The translations under genes and the position numbers were made by a program. A stretch of DNA of 43,205 bases. It comes from Schmidtea nova (lineage: Eukaryota). The notes below the pieces were generated by a model that saw only the letters and a list, made by a program, of their open reading frames with translations, searched no databases and had not been told where the DNA came from. Below are positions 11,511 to 42,583 of this stretch, one piece after another (position 1 is the stretch's first letter; every line of letters starts with the position of its first letter). The stretch spans positions 408,352,796 to 408,396,000 of the forward strand of contig CM097883.1 of the NCBI GenBank assembly GCA_044892505.1, given 5' to 3'.

Positions 11511-11560
11511 TACTATCAATAACCTAATTTCAACCGTTAGCTACCCACTGTGAGAAATTT

Positions 11561-11609
<49 letters not shown>

Positions 11610-13084: not shown

Positions 13085-13620
13085 AGGCAGACCAGCCGCA
13101 CAGTTTGTAATGTTATGAAATACCCTGCAAAATCTGCTGCGGTAACATTCTCTACTTCCGACAAAATAAGTTCGGAAAGTTCATTTGATTCGGCCATTCG
13201 TAACCGAGAAAGTGTTTTCAATTGAACGTGTAACCAAATTCTTCTGTAATTCTTTGAAGTTCGTCTCTTTTATGAACTCTAGCATCGTCAAGAATCAAAC
13301 ATACTTATTCCATATTTAGGTTATTACGTTTTTATAATAGGACCGACTTTCCATTTTTAACAATCAAAAACAAATTATATTTATGATTATTATTAATATA
13401 ATTCTGAAATAAGGTAATAAATAATAAAGGTAGTCAAATTTACTTGGATTACATATTTCTTTCGAATAATATGGTAAATATAATATGAAAGTATTGTCAA
13501 GAATCAAACATACTTCTTCCATATTTAGGTTATTACTTAAATATTGGCACAATTCCAAAAGCATTTATTGTAGAATTTGTGATGTTTTTACAAAAACACA
13601 TCTGATTTATTGACATACTG
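13085..13620 (-). pseudogene. Tc1/IS630-like DDE transposase relic, duplicate copy 1
   Basis: NVFSEYVLELCQYLSNNLNMEEVCLILDN, VCLILDDARVHK and IENTFS fragments match DDE_3-type motifs; internal partial duplication and deletion. Confidence 0.6.
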
Positions 13621-13893
13621 ACATATCTGACCTACCTCTAATTGTTGGTATACTTATATTTGCTCTTGTTCCTTTGCGTAAAGAATAAATGTCAATTTAA
13701 TATTTTAATAAACTTTAAAAATAAGAATAGATAAAAAACCAACAAATTTGAATTCAAAAAGAAGAAAAAAGGGTGAAATAGAAAGAGAAATGGTATATAA
13801 ACATTATTTGCTATCATGTAAATTTTTATAAATTTAAATATAAAATTATAAAATTAAATATTTTCAAATTTCAAATCACTATTAACAAAAACT

Positions 13894-14446
13894 GGATCAG
13901 AATTAGAAGTTTCCCCACAAAATTAACAGAATTAAAAGTTTCCCCCAGGTAATTTAAAATTACAAATTAAATAAATTGAATTATATATTACAGAAAATAT
14001 TATTATTTTAAATTAAACCAAGTTATATATATATATATAGTAAAAAGGGCGACGCTCTAGTGTATGTCGCCCGAAAATTTTAAATAAAAAAATGAATTTT
14101 AAATTATAATGTAAAACTAACAACATATATTTATTCAAAAATAAACTAAATAAGTATTAACAACAGTAACAATCAGATTTATTCACCGATATCGTACTTC
14201 GAAGCAACCAACCGCCTAAATATAATCAAAATATCCTCTTTGTCAACATTTTGTCTTGAAAGCCACAATCGAAAATCCAGAAAATTAATCTTTTGTTCAA
14301 TACTCATTCCTCGCCTTTTCCTCATGTCTACCTTAATGTTTCCCCACCGTCCTTCCATTTTATTGGTATGGACATTGGTTACTGGATCTTTGAACCAGAG
14401 CTTGTGATTAACGGACAAATGTATATAATTTTGATTTTCCAAATTT
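13894..14446 (-). mobile_element. Duplicated left ends of the TIR element and Merlin, with the transposase C-terminus (14179-14446)
   Basis: Identical to 17464-18010; Merlin TIR starts at 14048; truncated at the duplication junction. Confidence 0.85.
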
Positions 14447-14496
14447 AGCACGTTTTAAAATCACTTTTAGACACAGTTTTAAGCACTTTTAGCCGT

Positions 14497-15060
14497 TATA
14501 AAATTCAAACAACGAAATTACGAAAAGAAAGAATTAATTCGAAAAATAAATCAAAAATTAATAAAATATGAAAATGAATAGAACATTTATTAAAAATATA
14601 AAAGCCTATAATAATTGGATAATCAAACCAATTAAAAGCACAGATCGGTTCTGATTGGCTGATTGAACGCAAAAATTACTATATAAAGGACGCTCAATCA
14701 GCTGTTTTATAAAAATAAACAGCACGTTTTAAAATCACTTTTAGACACAGTTTTAAGCACTTTTAGCCGTTATAAAATTCAAACAACGAAATTACGAAAA
14801 GAAAATAAATTACGAAAAGAAAGAATTAATTCGAAAAATAAATCAAAAATTAATAAAATATGAAAATGAATAGAACATTTATTAAAAATATAAAAGCCTA
14901 TAATAATTGGATAATCAAACCAATTAAAAGCACAGATCGGTTCTGATTGGCTGATTGAACGCAAAAATTACTATATAAAGGACGCTCAATCAGCTGTTTT
15001 ATAAAAATAAACAGCACGTTTTAAAATCACTTTTAGATACAGTTTTAAACACTTTTAGCC
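14497..15060 (+). repeat. Second array of 292-bp promoter-bearing units (one shortened, one full)
   Basis: Copies of 10927-11510. Confidence 0.9.
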
Positions 15061-15112
15061 GTCACTATCAATAACCTAATTTCAACCGTTAGCTACCCAC
15101 TGTGAGAAATTT

Positions 15113-15161
<49 letters not shown>

Positions 15162-16635
15162 CGTTTTCATTTGTGTTCATTCGTGATCTTCATATATAGA
15201 ATTTTTCTTGAGGTTGCGGACGGCCCACAAGTTCGCCAACTTCACTGCGACTCGTCCATTAGACTTGCCTTTAGTGTAGAACGAAAGGAGGAATTTTCGG
15301 ATTTTTCGAGTTAATGATTTATTCCATGGAGGTGTTCGTGGTTTGGTGTTCCTATGGTGACAGATGTATTGAGAATTTAAATAAACGTGTGAGCTAGAAA
15401 ATTACAAAAATTAGCTCAATCGTATTAATTTCAGTTAAATCCAAAACCTTTGAGAAAGGATTAAAATTCCATGTAAATCAGACAGAAGTGAATCTTTGTA
15501 AAATAGATAATTCCAAGTTGATAGTAAATGTCGGATATATTCGTAATTGACAAAATATTTATTCCCATTAAAATTTTAGCAATGACAAATTTGATTGTTC
15601 GTCGGAATTGTAATTAATATTGTTAAATATTGTCATAAGGCCGATGAGCATAAAAATAAACCAACGAAATTAGCGGAAAATTGATACTAAATGTTATTAA
15701 ATAAATTAAATTAAATAAACAGCATAATAAAGCTGGAACATTTTATTTGTTATATGCATTAACATATCTCAAACAAAAAAATAGTTTGAACAACATTTAA
15801 TAATAACTAAACGAAAATCAAATACAAATCTAAATAAATTTATAAATGTTTGTAAAACTTCTCTAAAGCTGTATTCCTTTTTGTCATTGGGATTTCATTT
15901 CCATCTAGTTCCTATAACTGTGATAGAGCTAATATCACTAAATGCCGATAATTGAAAATTTTTGCGATGGGGTTTTGAAGAAGGCTTAAGCTTCTCAACT
16001 TGAAATATATTTTTAATGGATAAATATCTTTAGGATTCTCTATTTTATTAAAATCCAAATTTTATATCACCATATTTCGGAGAGAGAGAGAGGCTAGTTG
16101 TAGATAAAATCGTTTTGACTCCCCTGCATCTATAATTTCAAGGTTTTTGTTTTTCTTAATTCTGCTTTTTCTAATTATGATTTTTTCCAGTCATCCAGTT
16201 TGTTGATCCCCAAAGATGGTCTGTGGTTTTTTCCTGTAGACGTTGTAAAATTGTTTGATGTCATCGTATCTAGAACAAATCTTTGTAATAAAATTAATCT
16301 ATCAAAGATAATTCATAAAGATTATATACTAACTCTGTAAAATGAATACGTTTAATAATCTGATAATCAAGACTCTTTGGTGTTACTAAATATTTATAAT
16401 CTAATAATATTTCATCAGTATCTTATTGCTTAAATTTCCTATAATTTATACCATTTCAATTTCACCTTTTTTTCTTTCAATTTTACCTTTTTTTCTTTCA
16501 ATTTCACTTTTTTTCTTTCAATTTTTTTCTTTCTTTCATTCAATTTTTTTCTTTCTTTTTCTATTTCTTTCTATTTCAACACATTTCAAATATTTTAAAA
16601 ATCAAAAAATTGACTATCGAATTTATTGATGATTA

Positions 16636-17190
16636 AGGCAGACCAGCCGCACAGTTTGTAATGTTATGAAATACCCTGCAAAATCTGCTGCGGTAACATT
16701 CTCTACTTCCGACAAAATAAGTTCGGAAAGTTCATTTGATTCGGCCATTCGTAACCGAGAAAGTGTTTTCAATTGAACGTGTAACCAAATTCTTCTGTAA
16801 TTCTTTGAAGTTCGTCTCTTTTATGAACTCTAGCATCGTCAAGAATCAAACATACTTATTCCATATTTAGGTTATTACGTTTTTATAATAGGACCGACTT
16901 TCCATTTTTAACAATCAAAAACAAATTATATTTATGATTATTATTAATATAATTCTGAAATAAGGTAATAAATAATAAAGGTAGTCAAATTTACTTGGAT
17001 TACATATTTCTTTCGAATAATATGGTAAATATAATATGAAAGTATTGTCAAGAATCAAACATACTTCTTCCATATTTAGGTTATTACTTAAATATTGGCA
17101 CAATTCCAAAACATACTCCGAAAATACATTGGCATTTATTGTAGAATTTGTGATGTTTTTACAAAAACACATCTGATTTATTGACATACT
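16636..17190 (-). pseudogene. Tc1/IS630-like DDE transposase relic, duplicate copy 2
   Basis: Paralog of 13085-13620; retains a short segment deleted in copy 1. Confidence 0.6.
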
Positions 17191-17742
17191 GACATATCTG
17201 ACCTACCTCTAATTGTTGGTATACTTATATTTGCTCTTGTTCCTTTGCGTAAAGAATAAATGTCAATTTAATATTTTAATAAACTTTAAAAATAAGAATA
17301 GATAAAAAACCAACAAATTTGAATTCAAAAAGAAGAAAAAAGGGTGAAATAAAATAGAAATGGTATATAAACATTATTTGCTATCATGTAAATTTTTATA
17401 AATTTAAATATAAAATTATAAAATTAAATATTTTCAAATTTCAAATCACTATTAACAAAAACTGGATCAGAATTAGAAGTTTCCCCACAAAATTAACAGA
17501 ATTAAAAGTTTCCCCCAGGTAATTTAAAATTACAAATTAAATAAATTGAATTATATATTACAGAAAATATTATTATTTTAAATTAAACCAAGTTATATAT
17601 AAAGTAAAAAGGGCGACGCTCTAGTGTATGTCGCCCGAAAATTTTAAATAAAAAAATGAATTTTAAATTATAATGTAAAACTAACAACATATATTTATTC
17701 AAAAATAAACTAAATAAGTATTAACAACAGTAACAATCAGAT

Positions 17743-18603
17743 TTATTCACCGATATCGTACTTCGAAGCAACCAACCGCCTAAATATAATCAAAATATCC
17801 TCTTTGTCAACATTTTGTCTTGAAAGCCACAATCGAAAATCCAGAAAATTAATCTTTTGTTCAATACTCATTCCTCGCCTTTTCCTCATGTCCACCTTAA
17901 TGTTTCCCCACCGTCCTTCCATTTTATTGGTATAGACATTGGTTACTGGATCTTTGAACCAGAGCTTGTGATTAACGGACAAATGTATATAATTTTGATT
18001 TTCCAAATTTTCAAGGTTATAAGTTTCCTTCCAATAAGCGGGCCACCTATCACTGTAAATAATGCTGTTCGGCTTAACAAATTTCTCAATTAAAGCAATT
18101 AGTGTTTCTCGGCTTCGCTCAAGCACAATTTGTCCAAACCATTTTTTGGTACCTCGTTCGGTTCCTCCAAATAGCCATATTTCAGGATAGCGTCTTCCGC
18201 GATAATATTTCCATTTTTTTGAAATCAAAGTTTCGTCAATTTCTACTATTACGCCATTAGGACCGTCCGACATTTCAAGTAAAGATTCCGAGCACACCTC
18301 ATACAAGAAATTATTCCAATCAGAAATTGTTTGGTTAGCCATGCCAATCATAGACTGTATCCTGTTTGTGGGAATATCTCGCAGTCAAAAATACGTGAAT
18401 AATACCAGTTTTTTGAGTGGCATTCTGCTTTTTTCAAAAAAAACTGTCTTTGCGAATAGAAACTTGACTGCATTTCCTCGGACATTGAAAAACAAAACCG
18501 TCACTAGTTTGTGCCCTCTTTATCAAGGACATGTTACTTCCACAGCGACAAATTTTTGTCGTTGCAATTAGGTGGTGCGTTTGAAGATAGCGAATTATAC
18601 GTT
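17743..18603 (-). pseudogene. Merlin transposase with one frameshift and one stop upstream of the 202-aa open part
   Basis: VEIDETLISKKWKYYRGR, WLFGGTER, IYSDRWPAY, VNHKLWFKDP, TNKMEGRW; N-terminal CRCGSNM...FQCPRKC..SIRKDSFF/EKSRMPL. Confidence 0.9.
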
Positions 18604-18631
18604 CATTTTTTTTATTTTAAATTATTTAAAA

Positions 18632-18660
18632 CTAGCTGTTGTACCCGGCGTTGCCCGGGT
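18632..18660 (-). mobile_element. Helitron 3' terminus (hairpin plus CTAG|T)
   Basis: Minus strand ACCCGG-GCAACG-CCGGGT hairpin, then ACAACAG and CTAG followed by T; canonical Helitron end. The 5' TC end was not identified. Confidence 0.7.
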
Positions 18661-18664
18661 TTTT

Positions 18665-19640
18665 TTACTGTGTCACAACTCCAGGATTCTTGCTGTCTTT
18701 TGCTTTGGCAAACCTGTAAGCTGCTATTAATAAACTAAAAAAATGTTCATGGTTTTGATTTGCATGAGCTATTTTGATATGTCTGTTAAAATGATTTTTT
18801 CTTGAAAAACTGTTGTGGCAAATATGACACTGAAATCTTTGTTGCTTTTCATGCACTGTTTTTGTATGTGAAAGCAGATTATTTCTTTTTCCAAATGTGA
18901 TTTTGCAGATTGAACATTCAAATGTCTTTTGTTTTTCATGCACTATTTTTGTGTGTGAAAGAAGATTACTTCTCTTTCCAAATGTTTTTTTGCAGACTTG
19001 ACATTCAAATGTCTTTTGTTTTTCATGTACTGACTTTATGTGTGAAAGAAGATTGTCTTTTCTTCCAAATTTTTGGTTACAGATTGAACACTCAACAGGT
19101 TTTTGTTCTTTGTGAATTGCTTTGGTGTGGTTTAGAATACGTTTTTCTCTTTCCAAGCCTGTATTGCTACTTTTACGTTTCAAAATTTGGTTATGATCTT
19201 TTATCTGCTGATCACTGTAATTTGTAGAATCCTGAAAACAAATAGAAGTTTAATTTTTTTTTAATAAGTACAAAGTGAAACGTGCAATATAGGCATCTAA
19301 AAAATACAACTAAAAAGAGAGTCAATTTGGTCCTGGTAATTTGAATTAGACTTTTTGATATTTTCAACTCTTTTTAATAAAAACTATAAAGACTTTCAAA
19401 TCATTTTTTTAATTGTTTATCCATTAAAGGTTTTCTAAATCATCAGCGTTAAAGTTTTTTTGTCACTTTCGTTGAGTTAAAACTATTAAGAACTTTTTTA
19501 CAATATTTTGCACTAACTTTTTCTAGCTTTTTACGAATTTTATTTGTTAGAAACTTTTCAACAAAACCAAACAAAACACTTGGTCACATAAATTTTTTAA
19601 AACATACAAACAAACAACTAAAATTTAAAAATCTTACCAT
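18665..19640 (-). CDS. C2H2 zinc-finger gene (four full fingers plus a half finger), probably two exons
   Basis: Four CxxC-x12-HxxxxH repeats with HEKQKTFEC linkers. ATG at 19640-19638 is followed by GTAAG; acceptor TTTTCAG at 19232; exon 2 from 19231 is in frame (M|DSTNYSDQQ...). Confidence 0.75.
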
Positions 19641-24430: not shown

Positions 24431-24904
24431 TATCAAGAAATTATCGTATTGTTTGTCCTTATGAAGATTTTTCTCTACTTGCACAGATCTCTCCCCGAGT
24501 CGACCTCTGAAGCTGGAGTTACTCTTGCAATCATGTTTTCTCTTAATCTACAATAAAAATATCATCTATTCAACCTTTAAATTTATCCCTGGAATCATTC
24601 GAAGCTCTTATGAATTTTATTTGATAAAATTTTCATATTTATGGATCAAAAATTAAAAAAACATAAATCATTAACTATTCCCTCTAAAGTTCGTAAGTCC
24701 GCATTACATTTATATTCTCCAACCGCATAGGGTGAATCTATTAACAATTTCCCTTCTCCATAAATTGAATTGCCGCGCTTTAATCTTTGATCCCCGTTGT
24801 TGGTGTGGGAATGTCTAATGCAGTCGCAGTGATTGATATATACGATAATCGATTTCCATTAGCGACATATTTCTATTCAATGGGATTTCGCTTGGTGTTA
24901 ATTA

Positions 24905-27010
24905 TCTTGGTGTGCTGGCTGATGTTAGTCAACTTGGGATTTTATTGATGTTCGTATTAGGGTAATGCCGCCAACATAAAAATGTCTTTTTTTACATAAA
25001 AGTGTCCTTGCAATGCCTCTTTCATGGCCATCGGACTAAACTAGGTCCACTGTAACTCCTCAATACCTAGACCTTGCTTATTAATCTTACCCTCCAAAAG
25101 TTAGATTCGACGTTGTAGTTGTCACTTTCTGTCGGTATCTACTATTTGTTTAAGTCCTTCCATCTAAAAGAATAATTATAAAACATACATTTTATTGGCT
25201 AAATGGGATCATCCTATCCTTGTTCCTTTACAATTCAGGTCTAGTTTTCGCTATATTTATGATTCAATATTGATCCTGAAGTACTCTCTTCCCTTTACAC
25301 CACTCGTCGACATCGTCTCTAATATCTTCCTTATCGATTATTTGTCAAGCATGCCGCAATCATACGTTTTCAACCATGCAGATCACCATCCGTACGTATT
25401 CTTCATGTTACCTCAAGCATCCAAAATCCTCACAGATACTTCATTCATACAAAAAGTAAATAGAAGTCATAGCCCCAATTGTATTCAGTAATACTTAAAA
25501 ACAAACGAACAACAAAATGCAATGCTACGAGCGATTATTGGTTAGTTACACGTTGATTTAAATCCCACCCGTTAACTCTCGGGATCTGATAAGGTCCCTT
25601 CCTGGGAAGCGGTGGCTTCTTACTTGAGAACTCCGTTTGCTCGATAAAGCTCCGGATTCAGAGTCCAACAGACCCTCGAATTATATAGGAAAATCTCATA
25701 GACTTGAATATTTTGGGCCCACTGAGAGGAGTATCGCCAATCTGTTGAAAATGCGAAAGGAAGGTTTGAGAACTCCTGTGGCTCTTCGGTGTCTAGTCTT
25801 CTGGGACGATCTAGAAGAACATATCCTATTCGATGTAAGTCGCGTGTCGGAATGCGATCACCCAGCGGGGTGTCATTTCGTTATCGCGAAGAATGATAAA
25901 CCATTTGCGATGTTGATGTTTGAAATTTATCGATGGTCAGAGTGGTCCACCTTCGAACCATTTTTCCTCTGAGGGTTTTTCCCATAATTTGAAGGGTGCC
26001 TTGACAATGAATTGGCTACGCCATCGCCATCGCCGTGCTTGTCGGTGTGGATCGTTAAGCACACCTGCCGGGGCCTGTTTGGGAGGCCAGATTCCGTATT
26101 TGTTGACCTTTCCGTTTCAGCAATAGAGATGTTGACGATTTCGCATTATCTTAGAGATAGATTGCTTGCTGTCGAGAATGGGGGTTCGGTTTGTAGAGAG
26201 ATCGTTTGACGTGTAGGTCTTCTGATGCGTGAATTTGGTAATGTCTTCTGGCTACTCTACTATAAAAATGGCCAATATCCCTTATGACTATGTCTCCTTA
26301 CTTAATCGTGATTGAATCAGTCGATGAGTGGTACTGAATACATTATTCCATAACTTTATTGCGTCATTGATGTGATTTACTACTTCGTACTGCTAGGTAC
26401 TGCAAGGTGAGCGAATGAGTTACACCAGCGATCGGTTAACTTTTTTAACCATTACCCCAAAATATTTTTGCGTAAGTCGATATTATCCCCCCACCCATTC
26501 TGAAAAGAAAACAATCAATGTAAATTTTAAATAAACATTATTTATTAAATTAATTTACATTTACATATTTATAAAAAAAGTTACATGAAATAGCAATTTA
26601 AATATTAGAAAAATTTCCCTATTACCCAAAAATTTTTCATTTTTACCCCACTTGGGGTAATTTACCCCGGTTCCCCGACCGCTGAGTTACATTGTCGTGA
26701 AAGTCATATTTCAATCATTGGTAGGTTACGAACTATTTGTATTCACTCTATTTTCACAAATTCTACCAATTTCCTCTTTGGGTGACAACTTTCTATCTCT
26801 TATTGTCGACTCTCATATACTCTCAATTGTTTTTTCTTCCTTTTTATCTTCTGGGAGCTGATTCGTTTCCTTTTCTTAATTATAGTTTTCGGTTCAACCG
26901 ATGTCTCGCCTGAGTCTTCTTTCTGAATGGTGGTAGGGTACCATTTGGATAGAGTCATGGGCCGGATTAGTTCTGGTAGGTAATCAGCCACGAACTACTG
27001 GGTGATGTAA
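24905..27010 (-). mobile_element. Truncated LTR-family unit E
   Basis: Terminus TCTTGGTGTGCTGG...CAACTTGGG matches the A terminus; GATGTTCGTATTAGGGTAATGCCGCCAACATAAAAATG matches D; carries a coiled-coil ORF fragment; promoter end missing. Confidence 0.6.
26426..26684. mobile_element. hAT-type MITE, 259 bp
   Basis: TIR CAGCG(A/G)TCGG; 8-bp TSD AGTTACAC/AGTTACAT; TTACCCC subterminal repeats. Confidence 0.75.
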
Positions 27011-27012
27011 AA
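26800..27012 (-). pseudogene. C-terminal fragment of the coiled-coil/basic-tail ORF, copy E
   Basis: YITQ*FVADYLPELIRPMTLSKW...KKRKRISSQKIKRKKKQ vs F YLTQELSQLIRPITYQHW...KKKSKMGARQRR. Confidence 0.6.
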
Positions 27013-28078: not shown

Positions 28079-28131
28079 CTGATTGGCCGGCCCAAACCAA
28101 AAACTACTATATAAGCAGTGGTTAAATCAGT
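28079..28131 (+). promoter_or_regulatory. Inverted CCAAT box plus TATA box (unit C)
   Basis: ATTGG at 28082, TATATAA at 28108 (26 nt). Confidence 0.7.
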
Positions 28132-29184
28132 TGAAGTAGTGTCATTTTACTGACTTAAAGACATATGGAAATTGTACCTGTATCAACGAGAATTTGTGAA
28201 AATAAAGGTATGTTCATGATCATTTAGTTGTGTTGTTATACGTCCCGAAGGTCTCCGGACCCGACGGGTGACAATGGGTCTCTCGTAGCAACACCTTATG
28301 GGTGATGGCCGATGCGGCGGAGGAGCACCAATAAATGTGGGAGAGGTTGCGCATAGGATTGTCCGAAGTAGTGTCGTGAACACTAGTAGAGATATCCCTC
28401 CAATTTCAGAAACATTTCTTTTTCAATGAACATAACAGCTCGATTTATCATCAAGGGAAAGGGAATTTAACAATGCCACTCGCATTCATAGGAATCACTA
28501 CATGCAGAAATTTTTACCCAAGTGCAATATGGGAGCGACAATAGAGATCCGCACCAAAATACCCCGACATGAGGTGGAAGGAATGTCAGGGGAAATGTTT
28601 GATATGATACAGTTGATGGTGTTTGGTTGATGTACTGATTGATGGTGTGATACATGAATTGAACGCGCCAACTACCGTAGGAAATCAGAGGAGGTAGGGC
28701 GAATGCATGAGGCTTGAAATGTTTTCGGTCGACGGCACCACTGGATGAAAGGCTGCTTGTCGACGGATTGGAGTATACATAAGAGTAATTTGACGTATAA
28801 AAAGGCAGATCTGACCGCTGAGTGCTGAAGTTTGTTGAAAATATCTAGTGAGTGAACAACAATTGTAGTTGAATGCAGACCGAGATCAGTGCATAATAAG
28901 TCACGGTTGAGCGTAGGCTACCACACAATACAGAACCATGGCTGAATGGTTACAGTGATAATTTTCTGAATTACTGTAGGAATGAGTGCTGTTGTGATTG
29001 AAAGAATGAGGATGCGTGGAAAGGGACAATGAGAAATGAATGTTGTATGGAATTTTCTAAATAAGGAATGATGTGATGAAGGGAAATTAAAAGACTATAT
29101 GACGGGATCGAAAGAATAAGTGGTGTGGGGTATATAAACTTAGCGAAATATCTTGAGCGTATAGAATTGCGACCGGAACAAATC

Positions 29185-29340
29185 CACACAGGTCTTCTAT
29201 CGGCAGTGGTGAACCCGTAAATTTTACCTGCCGTTAGACTACAACGCTAGATGCATTACTAACATGATGAGCAATTAGGGACGAGTCATGGGCATCAGCG
29301 GGAGAATGTTAATGTGGGTGGGATTGCCCTAATATTAACA
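29185..29340 (+). ncRNA. Conserved structured RNA element, copy C
   Basis: CTTCTATCGGCAG...CTGCC; CATGAT/GTCATG stem (29263-68 with 29285-90), 16-nt loop with ATTAGGG complementary to CCCTAAT at 29327. Confidence 0.65.
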
Positions 29341-30042
29341 TCAAGAAATATCCATGTTAAACATCAACCAACAAATCAGCATGGTGGTTTTGTGTAATAA
29401 CAAATGAAATAAATTTTATTGAATTGAAAATTTGAAAATGTATAGTTGACATTGTCATCGCAGAGACACCCAATCTTCGTTCTTCAGATATTGTAATGAC
29501 TTTTCTACCCAATCCGGATCGACTCTTTCTTGCTTGATTGTCATGTTGACTTTTGTATTTTAAAATGTCATGCTTCGTAGAAATCATAGTATTTGTAATG
29601 TTACTATAAAATAATATATATGTCTATCAATTTACTTTTATTTTATTTAATATCATGTTTATAATAATATTAATTTTTTGAATTAAAATTTATACATCAG
29701 ACACAAACATTTATTTAAACCAATTTTGAAAACGAAATTTTTATGTTTTATAATTTTAAATTTATAAAGTTATTTTAAATTTATAAAACGGAAATTAATT
29801 GGAAATTAGTATTTACAATATTTTAAAATGAAAAATTGTAAATAAAAACGCCTCTGATTGTATGGGGCAATTAACTCATTACATGCAAATTTATCCCAAA
29901 TGAACCTTTACAATTAAATCGGTTAATCTATGCGCAAAATGGACAGGAACCGGAACTCAGATAATTTCCATCCAATTGAATTACAGTTATGTTTAAGATA
30001 TAGACATAATCTGTTTCATTAATTTTCTTATTACAATTGATA

Positions 30043-32998: not shown

Positions 32999-33160
32999 NN
33001 NNNNNNNNNNNNNNNNNNNNNNNNNNNNNNNNNNNNNNNNNNNNNNNNNNNNNNNNNNNNNNNNNNNNNNNNNNNNNNNNNNNNNNNNNNNNNNNNNNNN
33101 NNNNNNNNNNNNNNNNNNNNNNNNNNNNNNNNNNNNNNNNNNNNNNNNNNNNNNNNNNNA
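32999..33160. other. Assembly gap (162 N)
   Basis: N run. Confidence 1.
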
Positions 33161-33798: not shown

Positions 33799-34102
33799 CT
33801 AATATTTTCTATACCTTCTTAGTTTCTTATAAATCTTGGTTTTCATTTCTCTTCTTTTTGGTCATTTTTAAAATAAATATTTTTTATAGTTAAAGAAAAT
33901 CATTTTAAATCTGATTTTTATTTCAAGGATCTTTCGTTGTATTTAATAATAATTGTAATGTTACTCGTGAGCGATAATTTTCATTGAGGTTTGTTGTAGG
34001 ATGGAGTATTCGTGTGAATGATTTTTGTGGAAGATTGAAGAACCCAACAAATTCTCCAGTGAAAACTGTGTCTTGACTGTTGGGGTGCGTGTTGTGTAGT
34101 TG

Positions 34103-34104
34103 TA

Positions 34105-34177
<73 letters not shown>
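34103..34177. repeat. (AT)n microsatellite (others at 3628-3661, ca.11566-11602, ca.15116-15154)
   Basis: Direct. Confidence 0.95.
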
Positions 34178-34180
<3 letters not shown>

Positions 34181-34311
34181 CATTAACAAATAACAAACAG
34201 ATAATGAACAACTTTTATAATAACTTTATTTAACAAAAAAAATACAATTAATGTCTACTCACGATAAAAAAAATCAAATGTTTTGAATAATCTTCTGTTT
34301 ATTCTATAATA

Positions 34312-34974
34312 TAGGGTTTCCCTTTCGTTAGGGACAATTTCCCTACCAAAAGTAACAGTTTTCCTATCAATATGATAATTTTCCCTATCAATAGTAACAT
34401 TTTCCCTATTAATAAGGACTTCCGTAAATTAAAATTATGAAATTTAAGATACCAATCCTTGATTTATTGATATGTAAAGAAAGGGATGGGTATACACCAT
34501 AAAAGTGTATATGGTATAAAAGTGCATATGTAGCATCATTACCGAGGATTGGATGAATTAATTCAAAGAGATAATATTAATTTGTTTTTCTTGCCACCAT
34601 ATTCACCGATGTTAAATATTATCGAAAATTGTTTTTCAAATTGGAAAAATAATGTTGCAAGGTCTGAGGTTACATCTGAGGTGGAGTTATTTCGCCAAAT
34701 AAACACTGTATTTCAAACAATAACAACCGAGGATTGTAATGGATTTTTTTAAGAAAAATGCTGAGGTATTTCGAACGCTGTAGAAATCGTGAAATATTTA
34801 TTGAATAAAATCATATATGATAATCTCATTTTTATTCTTTACTTTATGTATTTCATTTTATTTGTTACTTTTATATTTTTTAATTATTTCCATAATGATA
34901 GGGAAAATGTCCGATTTGATAGGGAAATTGTTACTTTTGGTAAGGAAATTGTCCCTAACGAAAGGGAAACCCTA
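34312..34974 (+). mobile_element. Tc1/IS630-like internal-deletion derivative, 663 bp
   Basis: TIR of about 50-60 bp starting TAGGGTTTCCCTTTCGTTAGGGACAATTTCC, TA flanks, transposase remnant inside. Confidence 0.85.
34549..34790 (+). pseudogene. DDE_3 transposase C-terminal fragment
   Basis: FLPPYSPMLNIIENCFSNWK is the Tc1/IS630 YSPDLNPIE motif. Confidence 0.85.
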
Positions 34975-36554
34975 TAATTGCTTCATCGATTTTTTTAAAA
35001 ATTTTATTATTATTCATACTACAATGATATAACAGATGTAATTTTAATGATTTGTGTGGTTTATTTTCCGCTGTAGTTAATTTATATTTTTGTGTTTGCC
35101 ATTATAATATGAATTCAAATTCTAAATTTGAATTTGGCTTGCTATAGTAAATTACAAAGAATACAAAAAACCAATCTACAAATTAACAAATGAAAAGTCT
35201 ATTGAAGGAAGCTAAATTATTTAAGAAGACACTCAATATAAATTAAATATCAGAAACTTCGAATTATCAACCAAAAGAAACCAAATTGTCGAAAAGAAAG
35301 TAATCTAATCAAAGAAGTGGAAAACCCATTTATCATAAGTATTTTTTTGAAAATCCTAAAACGTAATAATGCGTGAGTGTTATTATTATAAATAAATTTT
35401 ATCATTTCTCATTGTAATTTTTTATTCAATTATAAAATTATACACTCATTCATACAAGCACGCATACTTAACCCACATTATAGAAATAACATTCACCCTA
35501 GCAGTCCAGGCACACTTTTACAGGAGACTCGCTAGGCTCTACATTTTCTCAATACACTGTCAATAAACTAACATATAATAAATATCGACACAATTACAAC
35601 AATCGTAACGATAATCAAGACAGATAATAACAGTCATATATTAAAAGATAATAAAAGATACACACACAATAAAAGGGGATTCACAAAAAGGGGAACCTGA
35701 ATTCAAAAATTTTACGAACACTATCGACAAAACAAAACAGAATTATCTCATTAGTACACTACAATAATGTTAAAAGTTGAAAATAGCATTCATTACCTAA
35801 AAATGACAGTCAGATTTACACGTGGAAATGTTTCGTCGCTACTGTTTACCGCCTGGGAGGATTTCTTGTGACAGATCGAAAGTCACATGTTTTTTTCTGT
35901 TTTAAATAATCGAAATCGGAAAAAATACAAACAACCAGCACATTTTACTGAAATGTTTTTTATTCAAACATAAAATTCCTGATTTTTTCAAACATTTAAT
36001 TTACAAAAAAATTTTGAACCCTATCAAAATTTTTTTTTATTATTTATAAATAAGTTTTCCTTGTTATTATTGACAGTAACTAGTTTTTTAATTCATTTAA
36101 ATTTATAATTTTTCTATATAATAATCTATTGATAACATAAAAAGGATGACATTAATTAGTAATTAAATTATTAACCAAAAATATCATATAATATGATAAT
36201 CTGAAAAAAATGCAAACTACCTTCATGTTTTACTGAAATGGTAAATCAAACCTTTTTTCTAAAAAAAAATTAACAAAATGTAATTTAGAATAATTATAAT
36301 TTAGTTTGCCTAACTATCTTTTGATAACAGATAATTCGTTTAAAACCATTGAGTTATGTTACAACAATCGGTTCCATTTAAAGATCTATTATCCATAAAT
36401 ATAGAGTGATCACTTTTAAATAGTCATGTATATTCTGAAATAAATAACACATTTATTGAATTACGCAATATACAGTGAACTGCTTCACCTTTGGTCTTTG
36501 GTCTCTAATGTTGGCGGTCTGGATTGGGTTAAAACAAAAATAGTAAATTAAACA

Positions 36555-36755
36555 AAACGCTCTAGGGATTCCTCCATCCAAAACCTTAACATAAAATGCT
36601 TACATATCACACGAGCACCCTCGATCATTTCCCTGTAATAATCGAGTTGGAAATGTGCAAGGTGTTTGAACAATGATGGGCAGGTGAGCTCTATTGCTAA
36701 AACTACTCCCCATTTATGTTCACGGGTTCGTCTCGCTGCCGATAGAAGGACTTAC
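36555..36755 (-). ncRNA. Conserved structured RNA element, copy F
   Basis: Minus strand CTTCTATCGGCAG...CTCACCTGCC; CTCGAT/ATCGAG stem with 15-nt loop whose AGGGA complements downstream TCCCT. Confidence 0.65.
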
Positions 36756-37074
36756 GCTTTAACTTTAATCTATCCGCATCCATTGTCTCTCATTTCAATT
36801 ATTTCTTTTCGGCCCCCTGTCTTTATAATAATTCAATTTTTCTTTCAGCGCCCTTCTTTACAATATCAACAAATAATCTTTAGTCAATTTCAATATATTA
36901 TCTCTTTAATGTTTCTATTGTTTATTAGATTTATGTTAATCCTATTGTTAATTCTAATTTATGTTTAATTTATTTGAAATTTTTAATAAATTACTTTATC
37001 TCATATACGTTACAATAAAATAAATACAAAACAAAAATTATTTAATAAGCGAAAATAACTAAATCACAGAATTT

Positions 37075-37668
37075 CTATTCAAAGTATTTGGTAATGTCTT
37101 CATCCGATATTGCAAAGTTCATTGTTAGATCAATCTCGGGAATCTCTTTTGACTGTTGTGCCAATTGCTGAAGAACTTGTTTCTTCCAGCGACGCTGGCG
37201 CGCTCCCATCTTGCTCTTCTTCTTCCTTTTACCTTCTGGATTTGTCGTGTTCTTTGGTGTACTTGCTGCTATTGTTATTGCGCGAACCTGAGATGGTTCC
37301 TCGGTGTTCGTTCCTTTTGTGCATCCTGCTTTCTCGTCAGCCCAATGCTGATAAGTGATTGGTCGAATGAGCTGGCTGAGCTCTTGAGTTAAATACGACG
37401 CCGTTACAGATTTTAGACATTTCTTTAGTTCCATCTTCGTCGCGTCCAATTCCATTTTGATCTCCTCGTTTACTCGCTGTGAGCGTTGATTTTTTATAAT
37501 TTGTGTTTTCATCTGCTCTGGACTGAACCAGCTTTTCTTCAGGTTTGAGATTATGCCATCGGCTTCTTTTATTTTTTCAGATTTCCGTAACATTTCTTTT
37601 TCCAGGCTTCGAATTATCCTCCATGCTTTATCCAATTCGGCTTGATTAGTTGCTGTGTTGGCTGACAT
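37075..37668 (-). CDS. Uncharacterised 197-aa coiled-coil protein with Lys/Arg-rich tail, encoded inside the LTR
   Basis: Intact ATG-to-stop frame preceded by an acceptor-like TTTTAG; homologous to three decayed copies in this window. Confidence 0.75.
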   Translation of the reverse strand: MSANTATNQAELDKAWRIIRSLEKEMLRKSEKIKEADGIISNLKKSWFSPEQMKTQIIKNQRSQRVNEEIKMELDATKMELKKCLKSVTASYLTQELSQLIRPITYQHWADEKAGCTKGTNTEEPSQVRAITIAASTPKNTTNPEGKRKKKSKMGARQRRWKKQVLQQLAQQSKEIPEIDLTMNFAISDEDITKYFE

Positions 37669-37795
37669 TCTCTAAAATTCAAGATGGTTTATTAACATAA
37701 ATTGGTTGTGTTGATTTGAACAATTCTCATTCTTTCGACGACTGTTAATTGTTAATTCAGGAAGAGAAAATGATTTACCTATTACACTTTCAACA

Positions 37796-37932
37796 CTGTC
37801 GCTATGTACAGCGATCAGATACATTTATTTCATAATATATTTTATTTGTTCACACCTGTGCTATGTACAGCAATCAGGATACGAAATAATTTAAACAAAA
37901 CTAAGATCTGCTGCCCTATATACAGGATTCAG
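37796..37932 (-). repeat. Three spaced short hairpin repeats (loop AT(G/A)TAC on +)
   Basis: CTGTCGCT-ATGTAC-AGCGATCAG, CTGTGCT-ATGTAC-AGCAATCAG, CTGCTGCCCT-ATATAC-AGGATTCAG. Confidence 0.65.
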
Positions 37933-38390
37933 GATAAGCAATTATATTTAATTATTTATGTGGAATGTTTGATCCTATAGCCTATTGCTGCTATGTTACT
38001 TGCGTAGTAGATCACTACGCTATTAAATTATCGATTTTTGAAATGGTTATGTTTTAAAAAATGTATTATGTACAAATTCTTAACCGTGTATCTGCCGCTT
38101 TATGCCCACAAACCCCAGATGTGACAATCGAAAAATATATATTAACACTCGGTGAATTCAAAAGAAAAATCAGATTGATAAAATCACAGTTACATCTGTA
38201 TCAACTAAAATCAAACTCTCCTCAACTATAACTCAAAAAATCAAATCGGTTATAAAATAAAACTTCAACTGGTTATACTATCCAGTGAAAAATCATGGTT
38301 AAAATAAAAATTCCTACCCTCTTCACGGCGCTTTACACCGGTCGGACGGCCTAACTGTACGGAGCAGTCATTCTACTCGGCACAGTATGC

Positions 38391-38685
38391 CTCCATTTCA
38401 CCGATTGCACGGTGATCGGAGCCCCTTGAATCATACGTATTTTTCTACTATATCTACTGTATATAAATAATATATATTCGCCTCCTTCCACTGATTGCAC
38501 AGTGGAAGAAGCTCGACCCAAAAATTACTTCTAAAAAATATATACTTGTAAGTAATGGTTAGCATACTACACTAAGGTTGTCTCCTTCCACCGATTACAC
38601 GATGGAAGAAGCTCAATAAAAGATAGATAAATAGATATATAGATATCGTCTTCTCCTTCCACTGATTGCACAGCGGAAGAAGCTT
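38391..38685 (-). repeat. Four spaced ca.32-bp hairpin repeats (loop ATT(G/A)CA on +)
   Basis: Starts at 38391, 38482, 38582, 38653; consensus CTCCTTCCACTG-ATTGCA-CAGTGGAAGAAGCT. Confidence 0.85.
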
Positions 38686-38897
38686 AAGTTTAATTCTAAA
38701 TTCAAATAGAATATAACATATTCAAAAAGGAAGTTTTATTAGTTTAATTTAAATAACTACAATGGCTAATGACAGAATTTCATAATAACAATTTATAAAT
38801 TCAAGAAAAATAAAATATTCATACCTAGTAGCTTCTCACAAAATTTGTATATAACAATACAAAGAAAAAATTTTTCAATCATAAAAACATTAAAAAT

Positions 38898-38952
38898 ATC
38901 TGAATCTGGATCAGTATTTATACTGACCAGATCAGTTCATTGACCAATCAGC
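38898..38952 (-). promoter_or_regulatory. Inverted CCAAT box plus TATA box (unit F)
   Basis: ATTGG starts at 38948 and TATAAATA at 38922 on the minus strand (26 nt); the TATA sits in the centre of a palindrome at 38906-38930. Confidence 0.7.
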
Positions 38953-39950: not shown

Positions 39951-40694
39951 TATGTTATCGTTTCATTAAAAAGTGATTTATGATTATTCTGATCGATAAA
40001 CTGAAACGCTTCCAACTTGATATCAGACGAATCTTTTAATTAAAATGAGTTCGAAATTGTTAATTGACAGAAATAAATAAAACTCGATTGAATCTTAGTA
40101 GGATAACAAAAAAAATTACCATTGTAAATCTTAGACTTTAATGGATTATTTTTGCAACATGTTTATATTTTATGATATGGATTCCAATAATGTTACTCGA
40201 TATAGAATGTATTTGTGTTGATATTGTACTTTTAAATAGTTCATATTTTTTTAAATTTTCTAGAAATTAGGCTTCATCCAATTTACTGATAATCAAAATT
40301 TATTTAGTGTAGCTACTGAAAAATTAATATAAATACATTGAAAAATTCATTTTTTATGAAATTTTGGAAATTTTTCATGCTCTAAAAGCTTTATAAATTT
40401 AATGATTCGAGAAGCATGGAAATAAGGCGCTGATCTACTGGAATATTCAAAAATGATTAAGATAGACCATAATCTACTAAATCCACTTTCATTTTCATTT
40501 TCCATCCTTTGGTAATCTTCATTTGAGTCATTTTTTAAATCGATATATGTTGAATCATCCAGTTTTTCATCGTCATCTATCAAATAATATACTTAGTCAT
40601 ATGAAAAGTTATCTAAATCAAAATCATCGGTTAAAAGTTATCCGTTAGATATGCTGGTTCGTTGGTTTGGTCTTAAAACTAAGGTTATTACTGA

Positions 40695-40885
40695 TGTTAG
40701 TATTAGGGCAACCTCACCAACATAAAAATATTCCCCTCGCTGATACCTGTGACTAGTCCCTAATTATTCGTCATGTTGGTACTGTATCTAGCGTTGTAGA
40801 ATGATGAGGCAGGTGAGCAACCTTGTGGCTACTATTCTCTCATTTATCTACGGGTCCACCACTACCGATAGAAGGTCTATGTGGA
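40695..40885 (-). ncRNA. Conserved structured RNA element, copy D
   Basis: Minus strand CTTCTATCGGTAG...CTCACCTGCC; TGAC/GTCA stem with 16-nt loop, ATTAGGG complementary to CCCTAAT. Confidence 0.65.
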
Positions 40886-41069
40886 TTTGTTTCAGTCCCT
40901 ATTTCCTTCATTCACTAGTCAATTTACATCTAGGGTTCTAGTTAATTATTCGCCTTCGGCCTTCCGGAAAAAAGAATTGTGTGAATCTCATGTCCTTTAC
41001 TTAAACATTCATTTCATCATCCATAACTCATCAAATGATTAAACAGACACAAGACATTTCGGCATTTTA

Positions 41070-41628
41070 TTAGGCTAACAACACCTTTGGATTAATTACA
41101 TTTAATAATTGTCGTTCTGACAGCCCGCTCAACAAGTCTACTTCGATGCCCATTCGCTTGGCATAAGCGCGTCTTTCTCGTCGGCGTTTTGCTCCTAACC
41201 TGTTTCTCTTTTTCGTCTTGGCGTTTGCTACTGTCGTTCCGGTTTGAATATCATTATTCATGAACAAGCTGTTTGTCTGATTTTCGGTTTGGGTCTCAAT
41301 ATTTACACTCCGCGACGTAACCCATCTGTCGAATGTGGCCGCCCGGATCTGATCTTTCAGGTATTCTGAGATAAAGTTGGCCGAAACTGTCTTGAGACAG
41401 CGATTCAATTCTACTCGGTAGCCGCCAGTTCAATTGATTTTTCGTTGAGGGCGCGCTGAGTACGATCCTTTCCTTTTAAGATCTCCTTAAAGGCGGCGGG
41501 CAAAACCAGCTCCGTCGGAATTTCTCTAAATCTACACTTTGCCTATTTACCGTTCCTTCCAGGAGACGGATACGTCGACGCATTTGTTCAATCTCCTCGT
41601 CCGCTATTGATTTAGGTAGGGGCTCCAT
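41070..41628 (-). pseudogene. Coiled-coil/basic-tail LTR ORF, copy D (two frameshifts)
   Basis: MEPLPKS...RRIRLLEG...RRSWFCP/AAFKEILKGKDRTQRALNEKSIELAAT/RVELNRCLKTVS...IRAATFDRW...KKRNRLGAKRRRERR; aligns to F KKSWFSPEQMK...SQRVNEEIKMELDATKMELKKCLK. Confidence 0.8.
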
Positions 41629-42583
41629 TTCCTAGAATGGAAACATGCTCATGTTATTATTTTAACGGTTAAAATGATTGATCGTCACTCTCATGTAAAT
41701 GCGTTGAATCCACAGCGAAACCCAAATTTATCTCATCTTTCACCCAATACTTGTCATCAATATACTCTCACATGCATCCCTCCCTCACAGACTCGTTTGG
41801 CATACTTAATCACTCCGAGTTACTACCTTTCGTATTTCAACTCATTCAGACGCAACATACAAATTACAACAATTTCCGAGAGACAATCAATTTATTTAAT
41901 AATTTTTTGATCTACACTGATCATAGCATTTTCATCGGGCTTTCCCGGGAACGCCTGAGGCTCCAATTCTGATCGTATTCGCTATCGCTCCGTTGAATAC
42001 CGTTTGCGTACTAGAGGTCTGGGTTTGGGTCCCAACACAATTGTCACTTGTATAGAAAGACCTCTTTCCATTCGACACCTGCTGCCCAAATTGAACTTTT
42101 CTCGCTCGAGGCCGGTGCTCCGGTTGGTAGATTGGTATATGGGGTCAGTTCTCTGGTGACCAGATTCCGTGGTCGCTCCAAAATTATGTATCCCAAACGG
42201 TGGATTTCGGTCACTGCTATTGGCTGAAAATGGATTAACCATCAGGGTTTTTCAGAAGGTTCCTGCATTTCGATGAACCTATTCAATTTACCCGAAGGGG
42301 GTTGGCGGGTTTCTAGCGGCCAATGGGAGTCACCTTCCCGTGGCAGCTTGATTCTTCATGACGTTTCGCTGGAAAAGAATCACGATATATCGTGCGTTCT
42401 ACGCCAATGGCGCAAATGCCTCTTTAAGTCGTCCTGGAGTCGTGTTGGCGCGTGGTTTAACGCTAGGATAATTAAAAATGAACGAGCGGGGTCATCCTTC
42501 CACTTCGCGTCTTTACATAGGTTAAAATTCAAGTACTAAGATTTATAATAATTTAGTTACTATAAATTTCATTCCAAATAGAA

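What the first reader, a model, noticed from the sequence alone, without database searches (positions are those of the whole stretch)
37075..37668. Unrecognised protein family present four times in 43 kb
Seen: copies at 9513-10032, 26800-27012, 37075-37668 and 41070-41628 share parts of SW(F)xP/SP, ATx(M/L/V)ELx(K/R)CLx(S/T)V, IRxxT(F/Y/L)xxW, T(Q/N)T and KK(R/K)xx(F/L/M)G followed by an Arg-rich run. The N-half looks coiled-coil. Only short motifs are conserved between F and A/D, which suggests long purifying selection. I do not recognise any Pfam domain.
Basis: partly seen in the sequence, partly recalled or inferred. Interest (0 to 1): 0.75.

Follow-up and report, generated by a model that had tools for sequence, protein, structure and literature searches.

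The report
Orphan protein of an enzyme-less repeat
The repeated "unknown protein" is real: it is the cargo of a 1.3-2.9 kb repeat unit that has its own promoter-like start and a structured 3' end but encodes no copying enzyme, so it is most likely a new protein-coding "hitch-hiker" mobile element of an AT-rich animal genome; one of six copies is intact.

Summary
The 197-codon ORF at 37075-37668(-) is intact. It has decayed relatives at about 9495-10032(+) and 41070-41628(-), with window-wide E values of 1e-7 to 1e-18. A borderline fragment lies at 26803-27006(-) (profile E 0.005), and I found an extra N-terminal remnant at 25014-25163(-).

Pfam, PHROGs, PDB sequences, Foldseek, a word search and a profile search of 1.84 billion proteins found no relative. 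The model is all-helical: a long helical hairpin, a disordered linker and a Lys/Arg-rich helix.

The ORF sits inside a repeat unit:
- a CCAAT/TATA-like motif and a leader motif at the 5' end;
- in one lineage, a second conserved coding piece (ORFa);
- the ORF;
- a 240-295-nt 3' module, better conserved than the protein, with a covarying 14-bp stem-loop.

One unit (28080-29386) has both ends but no ORF. I detected no reverse transcriptase, nuclease, integrase or gag domain anywhere in the window and no transposase beside the copies. There are no LTRs or terminal inverted repeats.

Best reading (0.45): a non-autonomous, half-LINE-like element whose protein packages its own RNA. Main rival (0.25): a birth-and-death host gene cluster. 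Mobility and expression are untested.

The parts
36504..38950 (-). Unit F, the only unit with an intact ORFb
   Evidence: Bounded by the promoter-like motif and the end of the 3' module.
37075..37668 (-). ORFb of F: intact, 197 aa, pI 9.6
36504..36798 (-). 3' module of F
   Evidence: nhmmer E 2e-58; alignments A3 and A8; covarying stem-loop.
38917..38950 (-). TGATTGG-N-TATAWA promoter-like motif of F
   Evidence: 8 hits in the window against 0.23 expected.
38833..38842 (-). Leader motif TTTGTGARAA of F, followed by an AG|GTAT donor-like site
40647..42560 (-). Unit D; the 5' end is approximate
41070..41628 (-). ORFb of D, broken by two frameshifts
41996..42241 (-). ORFa of D: second conserved coding piece, broken at least once
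   Evidence: E 7e-17 to 2e-18 against G.
40647..40914 (-). 3' module of D
   Evidence: nhmmer E 9e-73.
7507..10370 (+). Unit A, containing a 512-bp internal tandem duplication (7736-8766)
9495..10032 (+). ORFb of A, broken by at least two frameshifts and about two to four stops
10129..10370 (+). 3' module of A
   Evidence: nhmmer E 7e-64.
24901..26100 (-). Unit G with a large internal deletion; the 5' end is uncertain
25623..25880 (-). ORFa of G
25014..25163 (-). N-terminal remnant of ORFb in G (three in-frame stops)
24901..24986 (-). Tail of the 3' module in G
   Evidence: nhmmer E 4e-19.
26803..27006 (-). Fragment B: the middle part of an ORFb-like frame with one stop and no 3' module
   Evidence: (E 0.005).
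28080..29386 (+). Unit E: promoter-like motif, leader motif and 3' module, but no ORFb
29153..29386 (+). 3' module of E, the closest to D's (77-83% identity)

Best explanation
The ORF belongs to a lineage-restricted family of dispersed repeat units 1.3-2.9 kb long.

Anatomy, read 5' to 3' on the ORF strand:
1. A CCAAT-type/TATA-type motif.
2. About 70-80 nt later, a conserved leader motif followed by a donor-like GT.
3. A variable stretch of 0.6-1.7 kb. In the D/G lineage it holds a second conserved coding piece (ORFa).
4. The ~190-200-codon ORF (ORFb).
5. A 100-280-nt AT-rich spacer.
6. A 240-295-nt 3' module with a covarying stem-loop and a tail of short ACCAAC-like repeats.

The unit encodes no polymerase, nuclease, integrase or transposase.

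Most likely mechanism (all three steps inferred, none shown):
- The unit is a non-autonomous mobile element of the 'half-LINE' kind.
- Its protein self-associates through the N-terminal helical hairpin and binds nucleic acid through the Lys/Arg-rich helix. In this way it coats the element's own transcript.
- The 3' module is the cis handle recognised by a copying enzyme that an autonomous element elsewhere in the genome supplies in trans.

Shown here: the family, its anatomy, selection on the protein, conservation and covariation in the 3' module, and the absence of enzyme domains in the window.

Not shown: RNA binding, self-association, mobility and the identity of any partner.
For: - Six units lie in both orientations, interleaved with other repeats. 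They carry different degrees of decay.
- Lineages are so diverged that synonymous sites are saturated, yet pN is 0.17-0.41. Several long-lived lineages were therefore each under selection, and individual insertions then decayed.
- The 3' module is better conserved than the protein: an 11-nt invariant block, and 77-83% identity between D and E.
- The module holds a 14-pair stem-loop. 49 of 52 cells are paired and 7 pairs show changes on both sides. Slid controls gave 8-24 paired cells and 0-2 such pairs.
- Unit E keeps both ends but has no ORFb. Unit G keeps the 5' part and the module tail around an internal deletion. Derivatives that keep only the termini are typical of mobile elements.
- No RT, endonuclease, integrase, gag or transposase domain was found in the 124 open pieces of 62 aa or more across the window (apart from two DDE transposase pieces not assigned to any family unit: the IS1595-like one at 17746-18384 and one unlocated DDE_3 match). 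None was found in 100 further pieces of 42-61 aa around the copies.
- There are no LTRs or terminal inverted repeats.
- Protein architecture: helices 6-45 and 50-87, a disordered stretch at 116-148, then a basic helix at 155-175 with 10 K/R in 28 residues; pI 9.6.
Against: - No partner enzyme, no shared LINE tail and no homology to any known ORF1p could be shown.
- I identified no target-site duplication, poly(A) tail or clean 5'-truncated copy. Unit ends are approximate, because every copy here belongs to a different lineage.
- A TATA-type promoter upstream of the transcript start would not be carried by a simple RNA copy. Yet it is conserved in A, E and F.
- Intron-like signals seem to be retained.
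- Single-sequence folds of the 3' module are not unusually stable (z -0.7, -1.0 and +1.2).
- Six copies in 43 kb could equally be a local gene cluster.
- Only one window was available, so genome-wide copy number is unknown.
Confidence: 0.45

Rival explanations
1. A lineage-specific host multigene family evolving by birth and death in a local cluster. In this reading there is one working gene (F) and five pseudogenes or relics. The 5' motifs are an ordinary RNA polymerase II promoter and leader exon. The 3' module is a conserved 3'-UTR or a neighbouring RNA element.
For: - All copies lie within 36 kb.
- The promoter-like CCAAT/TATA motif and the leader motif sit at fixed spacing in A, E and F.
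- In F, D and G the ATG is preceded within 0-3 nt by a T-rich run ending in TAG, which looks like a splice or trans-splice acceptor.
- There are no enzyme genes, repeat termini or target duplications.
- The protein has been under purifying selection.
Against: - Five of six copies are dead although their lineages were under selection until recently. D has only two frameshifts.
- Copies point both ways and are separated by unrelated repeats.
- E lacks the ORF although its 3' module is the closest to D's. Uniform pseudogene decay would not leave both ends recognisable and remove the middle.
- None of the protein collections searched holds a predicted relative.
Confidence: 0.25
2. ORFb is the first ORF of an autonomous retroelement (non-LTR or another kind). 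The enzyme-encoding part has been deleted from every copy seen here, or lies outside what one window shows.
For: - The coiled-coil plus basic-tail architecture resembles first-ORF proteins of such elements.
- The 3' stem-loop and short-repeat tail resemble 3' ends of stringent-type LINEs (the comparison is from my own knowledge).
- HAL1 shows that such deletions recur (PMC5753468).
Against: - Three lineages that differ by saturated synonymous change (F, D, A) all have ORFb only 100-280 nt from the 3' module. The short architecture is therefore old and was propagated as such.
- No RT or EN remnant was detected.
Confidence: 0.15
3. A DNA-mediated element of unknown type, or a captured host gene carried by one. 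It is copied as DNA together with its promoter and introns.
For: The promoter-like motif upstream of the presumed transcript start and the intron-like signals are part of the conserved unit. The same promoter motif recurs in a neighbouring 292-bp tandem array.
Against: No terminal inverted repeats, no hairpin-plus-CTRR end and no transposase next to any copy. The Merlin-like and DDE_3 pieces in the window are not adjacent to the units.
Confidence: 0.1
4. A chance open frame plus low-complexity similarity, with no real family.
For: The basic Lys/Arg runs are compositionally simple. Fragment B is borderline.
Against: E values run from 1e-7 to 1e-18 within the window. The matches are collinear and multi-motif. 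pN is far below pS. All copies share the 3' module in the same position.
Confidence: 0.02

Closest known systems
HAL1 ('half-L1') of mammals: a non-autonomous LINE-1 derivative that encodes only ORF1p (PMC5753468, citing Smit 1999 and Bao & Jurka 2010)
   Same: A repeat unit that keeps a nucleic-acid-binding first-ORF-type protein under selection but has no reverse transcriptase. By inference it depends on an enzyme supplied in trans.
   Different: No sequence relation to L1 ORF1p, and Pfam and PDB give no hit. No poly(A) tail and no known partner. The unit has a TATA/CCAAT-type 5' end and, in one lineage, a second coding piece. Mobility is not shown.
First-ORF proteins of non-LTR retrotransposons (L1 ORF1p type: coiled coil plus RNA-binding part)
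   Same: An N-terminal long-helix region and a basic nucleic-acid-binding-looking C-terminal part, on a small basic protein.
   Different: No RRM, CTD, zinc knuckle, esterase or PHD domain was detected. The modelled fold is only helices plus disorder. No ORF2 follows.
Stem-loop 3' tails of 'stringent' LINEs and their SINE partners (my own knowledge, not tested here)
   Same: A conserved 3' non-coding module with a covarying stem-loop and a short-repeat tail, more conserved than the coding part.
   Different: No LINE with this tail is available for comparison. The strand of the structure is not settled. Single-sequence folding energies are ordinary.
LTR-retrotransposon Gag
   Same: A small structural-type protein encoded near the 5' part of a repeat.
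   Different: No Pfam gag or zinc-knuckle hit, no LTRs and no pol.
Small delta antigen of delta-like agents (architecture only, recalled from memory)
   Same: About 195 aa, with an N-terminal coiled coil followed by Arg-rich nucleic-acid-binding segments.
   Different: No hit to the Pfam delta-antigen family or to any PDB chain. No ribozyme family in Rfam at gathering score or at E up to 5. The unit is genomic DNA with promoter-like and AT-rich parts. I reject membership.

Membership tests
LINE first-ORF proteins (L1 ORF1p and other described ORF1 types) | Sequence or profile similarity to a described ORF1 family | tested here: not met
   Pfam best E 7.5; PDB best E 0.24-1.2; 0 hits among 1.84e9 proteins.
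LINE first-ORF proteins (L1 ORF1p and other described ORF1 types) | Coiled-coil multimerisation region plus a nucleic-acid-binding region | tested here: inconclusive
   The AF2 model has a helical hairpin (6-87) and a basic helix (155-175), but pTM is 0.30. No oligomer or binding test was done.
LINE first-ORF proteins (L1 ORF1p and other described ORF1 types) | Followed in the same element by an ORF with endonuclease and reverse transcriptase | tested here: not met
   No such Pfam domain in 224 open pieces. ORFb lies 100-280 nt from the 3' module.
HAL1-like ORF1-only non-autonomous retroelement | Encodes a structural protein but no polymerase | tested here: met
HAL1-like ORF1-only non-autonomous retroelement | ORF and 3' end derived from an identifiable autonomous partner | not testable with these tools
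   The source genome is not available. The metagenome scan gave only a bacterial chance hit.
HAL1-like ORF1-only non-autonomous retroelement | Insertion hallmarks: target-site duplications, 5' truncation, 3' tail | tested here: inconclusive
   Short-repeat tails are visible. No target duplication or clean 5'-truncated copy could be defined, because the copies are too diverged to fix their ends.
LTR-retrotransposon Gag | Gag or zinc-knuckle profile match | tested here: not met
LTR-retrotransposon Gag | Flanking long terminal repeats and a pol gene | tested here: not met
   The 3' module occurs once per unit. No direct repeats flank the units. No pol domains.
bZIP transcription factors | Basic region plus leucine zipper above the Pfam threshold | tested here: not met
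   bZIP_1 scores 14.7 bits against a cut-off of 27.6, in copy D only; there is no hit for F.
TIR DNA transposon or its non-autonomous derivative | Terminal inverted repeats and a cognate transposase | tested here: not met
   The DDE pieces in the window are not adjacent to the units.
Host multigene family | Own promoter and exon-intron structure | tested here: inconclusive
   Motifs are enriched and correctly spaced, but no transcript data are available.
Host multigene family | Syntenic orthologues and expression | not testable with these tools
   No genome or transcriptome of the source or its relatives is on hand.
Delta-antigen-like proteins | Profile match to the delta-antigen family, with flanking self-cleaving ribozymes | tested here: not met

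The most novel reading that the evidence does not exclude
The units are a previously undescribed class of protein-coding but enzyme-less mobile element. It has been maintained for a long time as several lineages. Its single orphan protein, with no detectable relative in 1.84 billion sequences, is a new RNA-packaging or chaperone fold. Its structured 3' module hijacks the machinery of another element.
Probability: 0.2. Interest if true: 0.7.

Novelty: new variant of a known kind. Interest (0 to 1): 0.4.

Why it matters
If the units are mobile, they would be a protein-coding parasite of another retroelement outside mammals. Such an element keeps a packaging-type protein under selection while borrowing its copying enzyme. 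That would show that the 'half-LINE' strategy is more general than HAL1. It would also add an orphan nucleic-acid-binding protein and a conserved RNA handle for study. In practice, the family is invisible to current annotation libraries, so it will be left as unclassified repeat or mis-called as genes in genomes of this lineage. If it proves to be a host gene cluster instead, it is a fast-evolving orphan family with an unusually conserved 3' RNA element.

Tried and rejected
Searches and analyses that gave nothing:
- Pfam, PHROGs and PDB sequence searches, with the single protein and with profile A1: nothing significant.
- Word search with ORFb and with ORFa: nothing.
- Profile search of 1.84e9 representatives: zero hits.
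- Exact-sequence look-up of F and of a neighbouring ORF: not on record.
- Foldseek of the F model: only generic helical hairpins, best E 0.29.
- AF2 of ORFa: pLDDT 38, unusable, so I did not search with it.
- Rfam at gathering score and at E up to 5, and tRNA scan: nothing in or near the units.
With the conserved C-terminal stretch it returned one G+C-rich bacterial contig (L001), which is a chance word match and which I discarded.
- Terminal repeats and LTRs: none.
- 5' regions of the copies: too diverged for DNA alignment.
- A common G+C-rich 5' module: convincing only between A and E and partly F, with no conserved fold. I do not list it as a part.

Ideas dropped:
- An intron joining ORFa to ORFb. 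The donor-like site in G is out of phase and is not conserved in D.
- Antisense ORFs over the 3' module. I judged them a by-product of nucleotide conservation.
- Delta-antigen likeness and bZIP likeness (see Membership tests).

- I did not use the count of structure pairs, because it needs a long typed dot-bracket string. I made the same counts in a script.
- I left the N run at 32999-33159 untouched.
- I met no contig that I take for human.

Full report
**1. Setting**

The window is AT-rich eukaryotic DNA, about 31% G+C, with one N run at 32999-33159 that I left alone. I could not establish the source organism.

**2. Observation**

The ORF at 37075-37668(-), copy F, runs from ATG to stop over 197 codons.
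- It has 42% G+C against 20-30% in its flanks.
- No shuffle of the window gave an open frame as long.

Similarity within the window:
- tblastn of F finds a copy at about 9.5-10.0 kb(+) (A, E 1e-7) and one at 41.1-41.6 kb(-) (D, E 2e-10).
- D and A match each other at E 2e-18.
- The fragment at 26803-27006(-) (B) is weak pairwise. It scores E 0.005 against a profile built without it.
- A fifth remnant, an N-terminal piece at 25014-25163(-) (G), matches the N-terminus of D at E 3e-6.

Only F is intact. Counts of breaks in the others:
- D has two frameshifts.
- A has at least two frameshifts and about two to four in-frame stops.
- G has three stops in its remnant and one large internal deletion.
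- B has one stop and lacks the N-terminal half.

**3. The protein**

No library recognises it:
- Pfam best E 7.5. A sub-threshold bZIP_1 match appears in D only, at 14.7 bits against a cut-off of 27.6.
- PHROGs: nothing.
- PDB sequences: best E 0.24-1.2.
- Word search of 5.8e9 clusters: nothing.
- Profile search of 1.84e9 representatives: zero hits at E <= 1e-3.
- The exact sequence is not on record in the assemblies index.

The proteins I had in mind were L1 ORF1p, retrotransposon Gag, bZIP factors and the small delta antigen. None came back as a hit.

The AlphaFold model (mean pLDDT 69, pTM 0.30) has:
- two long helices, 6-45 and 50-87, with pLDDT 85-92;
- two short helices;
- a disordered Ser/Thr/Pro/Asn-rich stretch at 116-148;
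- a basic helix at 155-175;
- a short acidic C-terminal helix.

The protein has pI 9.6 and carries 10 Lys/Arg in residues 149-176. Foldseek returns only generic helical hairpins (best E 0.29).

Between lineages, non-synonymous differences are 0.17-0.41 per site, while synonymous sites are saturated at about 0.9 (each segment computed separately). The protein was therefore under purifying selection while the lineages diverged.

**4. The ORF is one module of a larger repeat unit**

*(a) A 3' module.* A non-coding module of 240-295 nt lies 100-280 nt downstream of every ORFb.
- nhmmer with alignment A8 finds exactly five copies: D 40647-40914(-), A 10129-10370(+), F 36504-36798(-), E 29153-29386(+), and the tail only in G at 24901-24986(-).
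- It is better conserved than the protein. It has an 11-nt invariant block, and D and E are 77-83% identical.
- RNAalifold finds a 14-pair interrupted stem-loop. 49 of 52 cells are paired and 7 pairs change on both sides. Partners slid by 1-3 columns gave 8-24 paired cells and 0-2 such pairs.
- The structure was derived from this same alignment of four sequences, so the paired-cell figure is biased upwards. The compensatory changes are the stronger evidence.
- G-U pairs do not settle which strand folds.
- Single-sequence folds are not unusually stable.
- The module ends in short imperfect ACCAAC- or AGACCAA-like repeats.
- Rfam has no match for it.

*(b) A 5' end.*
- TGATTGG-N(14-30)-TATAWA occurs 8 times against 0.23 expected. 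It lies upstream of A, E and F in the units' own orientation, and once in each unit of a neighbouring 292-bp tandem array.
- 68-80 nt after it, A, E and F carry TTTGTGARAA (5 hits against 0.87 expected). AG|GTAT follows this motif.
- In F, D and G the ATG of ORFb is preceded within 0-3 nt by a T-rich run ending in an in-frame TAG. This looks like a splice or trans-splice acceptor, but it is untested.

*(c) A second coding piece.* ORFa lies upstream on the same strand in D (41996-42241) and G (25623-25880).
- The two are 40% identical, E 7e-17, with pN 0.41 against pS 0.86.
- There is a weak trace in A and none in F.
- ORFa has no relatives and no usable model.

*(d) Structural variants.*
- Unit E (28080-29386) has the 5' motifs and a 3' module close to D's but nothing like ORFb.
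- G joins the N-terminus of ORFb to the module tail.

**5. What is absent**

- None of the 124 open pieces of 62 aa or more in the whole window matches reverse transcriptase, endonuclease, integrase, protease or gag. The same holds for 100 further pieces of 42-61 aa within a few kb of the copies.
- The only enzyme hits in the window are an IS1595/Merlin-like DDE piece and one DDE_3 piece. The Merlin-like piece lies at 17.7-18.4 kb, away from the units; the DDE_3 piece was not localised.
- No LTRs or terminal inverted repeats flank any unit.
- I could not define target-site duplications. Each copy here is from a different, deeply diverged lineage, so unit ends are known only approximately.

**6. 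Interpretation**

The pattern has five elements:
- several old lineages, each selected for its protein;
- individual copies in both orientations at different stages of decay;
- termini more conserved than the interior;
- derivatives that keep the termini and lose the middle;
- no enzyme.

This fits a non-autonomous mobile element best. The nearest known analogy is HAL1, the ORF1-only derivative of L1 (PMC5753468). A small basic protein with a long-helix N-terminal region is what one expects of a packaging or chaperone protein. A conserved 3' stem-loop with a short-repeat tail is what stringent-type LINE enzymes recognise; that point rests on my own knowledge and was not tested here. I put this reading at 0.45.

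Points against it:
- A TATA-type promoter is conserved upstream of the presumed start.
- Intron-like signals seem to be retained.
- There is no poly(A) tail or target duplication.
- No partner is known.

The main rival is a birth-and-death host gene cluster, at 0.25. It explains the clustering and the promoter. It explains less well why five of six copies are dead, and why E keeps both ends but not the ORF.

Two further readings remain open:
- ORFb is the first ORF of an autonomous element, with its enzyme part deleted in every copy seen here (0.15). Three saturated-divergence lineages share the short architecture, which argues against this.
- The unit is a DNA-mediated element of unknown type (0.1).

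**7. Novelty and score**

Nothing here is a member of a described family by any test I could run. By analogy it works like a known kind, an enzyme-less retroelement that keeps a structural protein. Unclassified repeats with orphan ORFs are common in AT-rich invertebrate genomes. A specialist would be interested rather than astonished. Interest: 0.4.

**8. Conduct**

- Profiles for searching were built from alignments of the sequences as they stand. Every query ended at a stop or frameshift.
- Slips, stated as required. Scripts printed coordinates of stop-free pieces or of per-frame matches inside the decayed copies. The approximate places of breaks could be read from those. In my working reasoning I also discussed frame changes in D and A.
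- After noticing, the family-specific scripts printed only outer bounds and counts. again listed stop-free pieces, because the Pfam scan needs them as references.

Noticed in passing
window 17746-19249 (-): An IS1595/Merlin-like DDE transposase piece (E 7e-9) next to an ORF with four C2H2 zinc fingers (E 1e-19). Relatives at 51-75% identity sit on ~1-kb metagenome contigs.
   Followed up: partly
window 10877-14446 and 14447-18010: A 3.57-kb tandem duplication at 98% identity. It includes part of the Merlin-like piece.
   Followed up: no
window 10632-11554 and 14447-15106 (+): A 292-bp tandem array. Every unit carries the same TGATTGG-N-TATAWA motif that precedes family units A, E and F, which recalls tandem promoter monomers. 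Its relation to the family is unknown.
   Followed up: partly
window 7736-8766 (+): A 512-bp tandem duplication at 99% identity inside the 5' region of unit A, so it is recent compared with the age of the copy.
   Followed up: no
window 38400-38720 (-): Three to four copies of a ~30-nt palindromic unit (CTTCCACTG...CAGTGGAAG), spaced 70-100 nt apart, in the 5' region of unit F. A second 18-nt motif is repeated three times at 37801-37932.
   Followed up: no
window 5265-5699 (-), 2492-2959 (-), 1889-2194 (-), 995-1567 (-): A run of same-strand ORFs without Pfam hits. The first reads by eye like a retrotransposon capsid-type protein. The second and third are paralogues of each other (self-similarity at 1.9-3.3 kb). 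This is probably another unclassified repeat.
   Followed up: no
window 3664-4166 (both strands): A 30-nt-period repeat that stays open in several frames and encodes Cys/Pro/Gly/Tyr-rich repeats.
   Followed up: no
window, not localised (one of the 124 pieces in alignment A7): One open piece matches the DDE_3 (Tc1/mariner-type) transposase domain at E 5.5e-11.
   Followed up: no
window 34310-34393 / 34893-34976: An 84-nt inverted repeat (88% complementary) with 499 nt between the arms, next to a long (TA)n tract at 34095-34190. It may be a small terminal-inverted-repeat element.
   Followed up: no
L001 (PVBE010029779.1): The only hit of the metagenome scan. It is a G+C-rich bacterial contig that shares one 8-residue word by chance and is not a relative.
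   Followed up: yes
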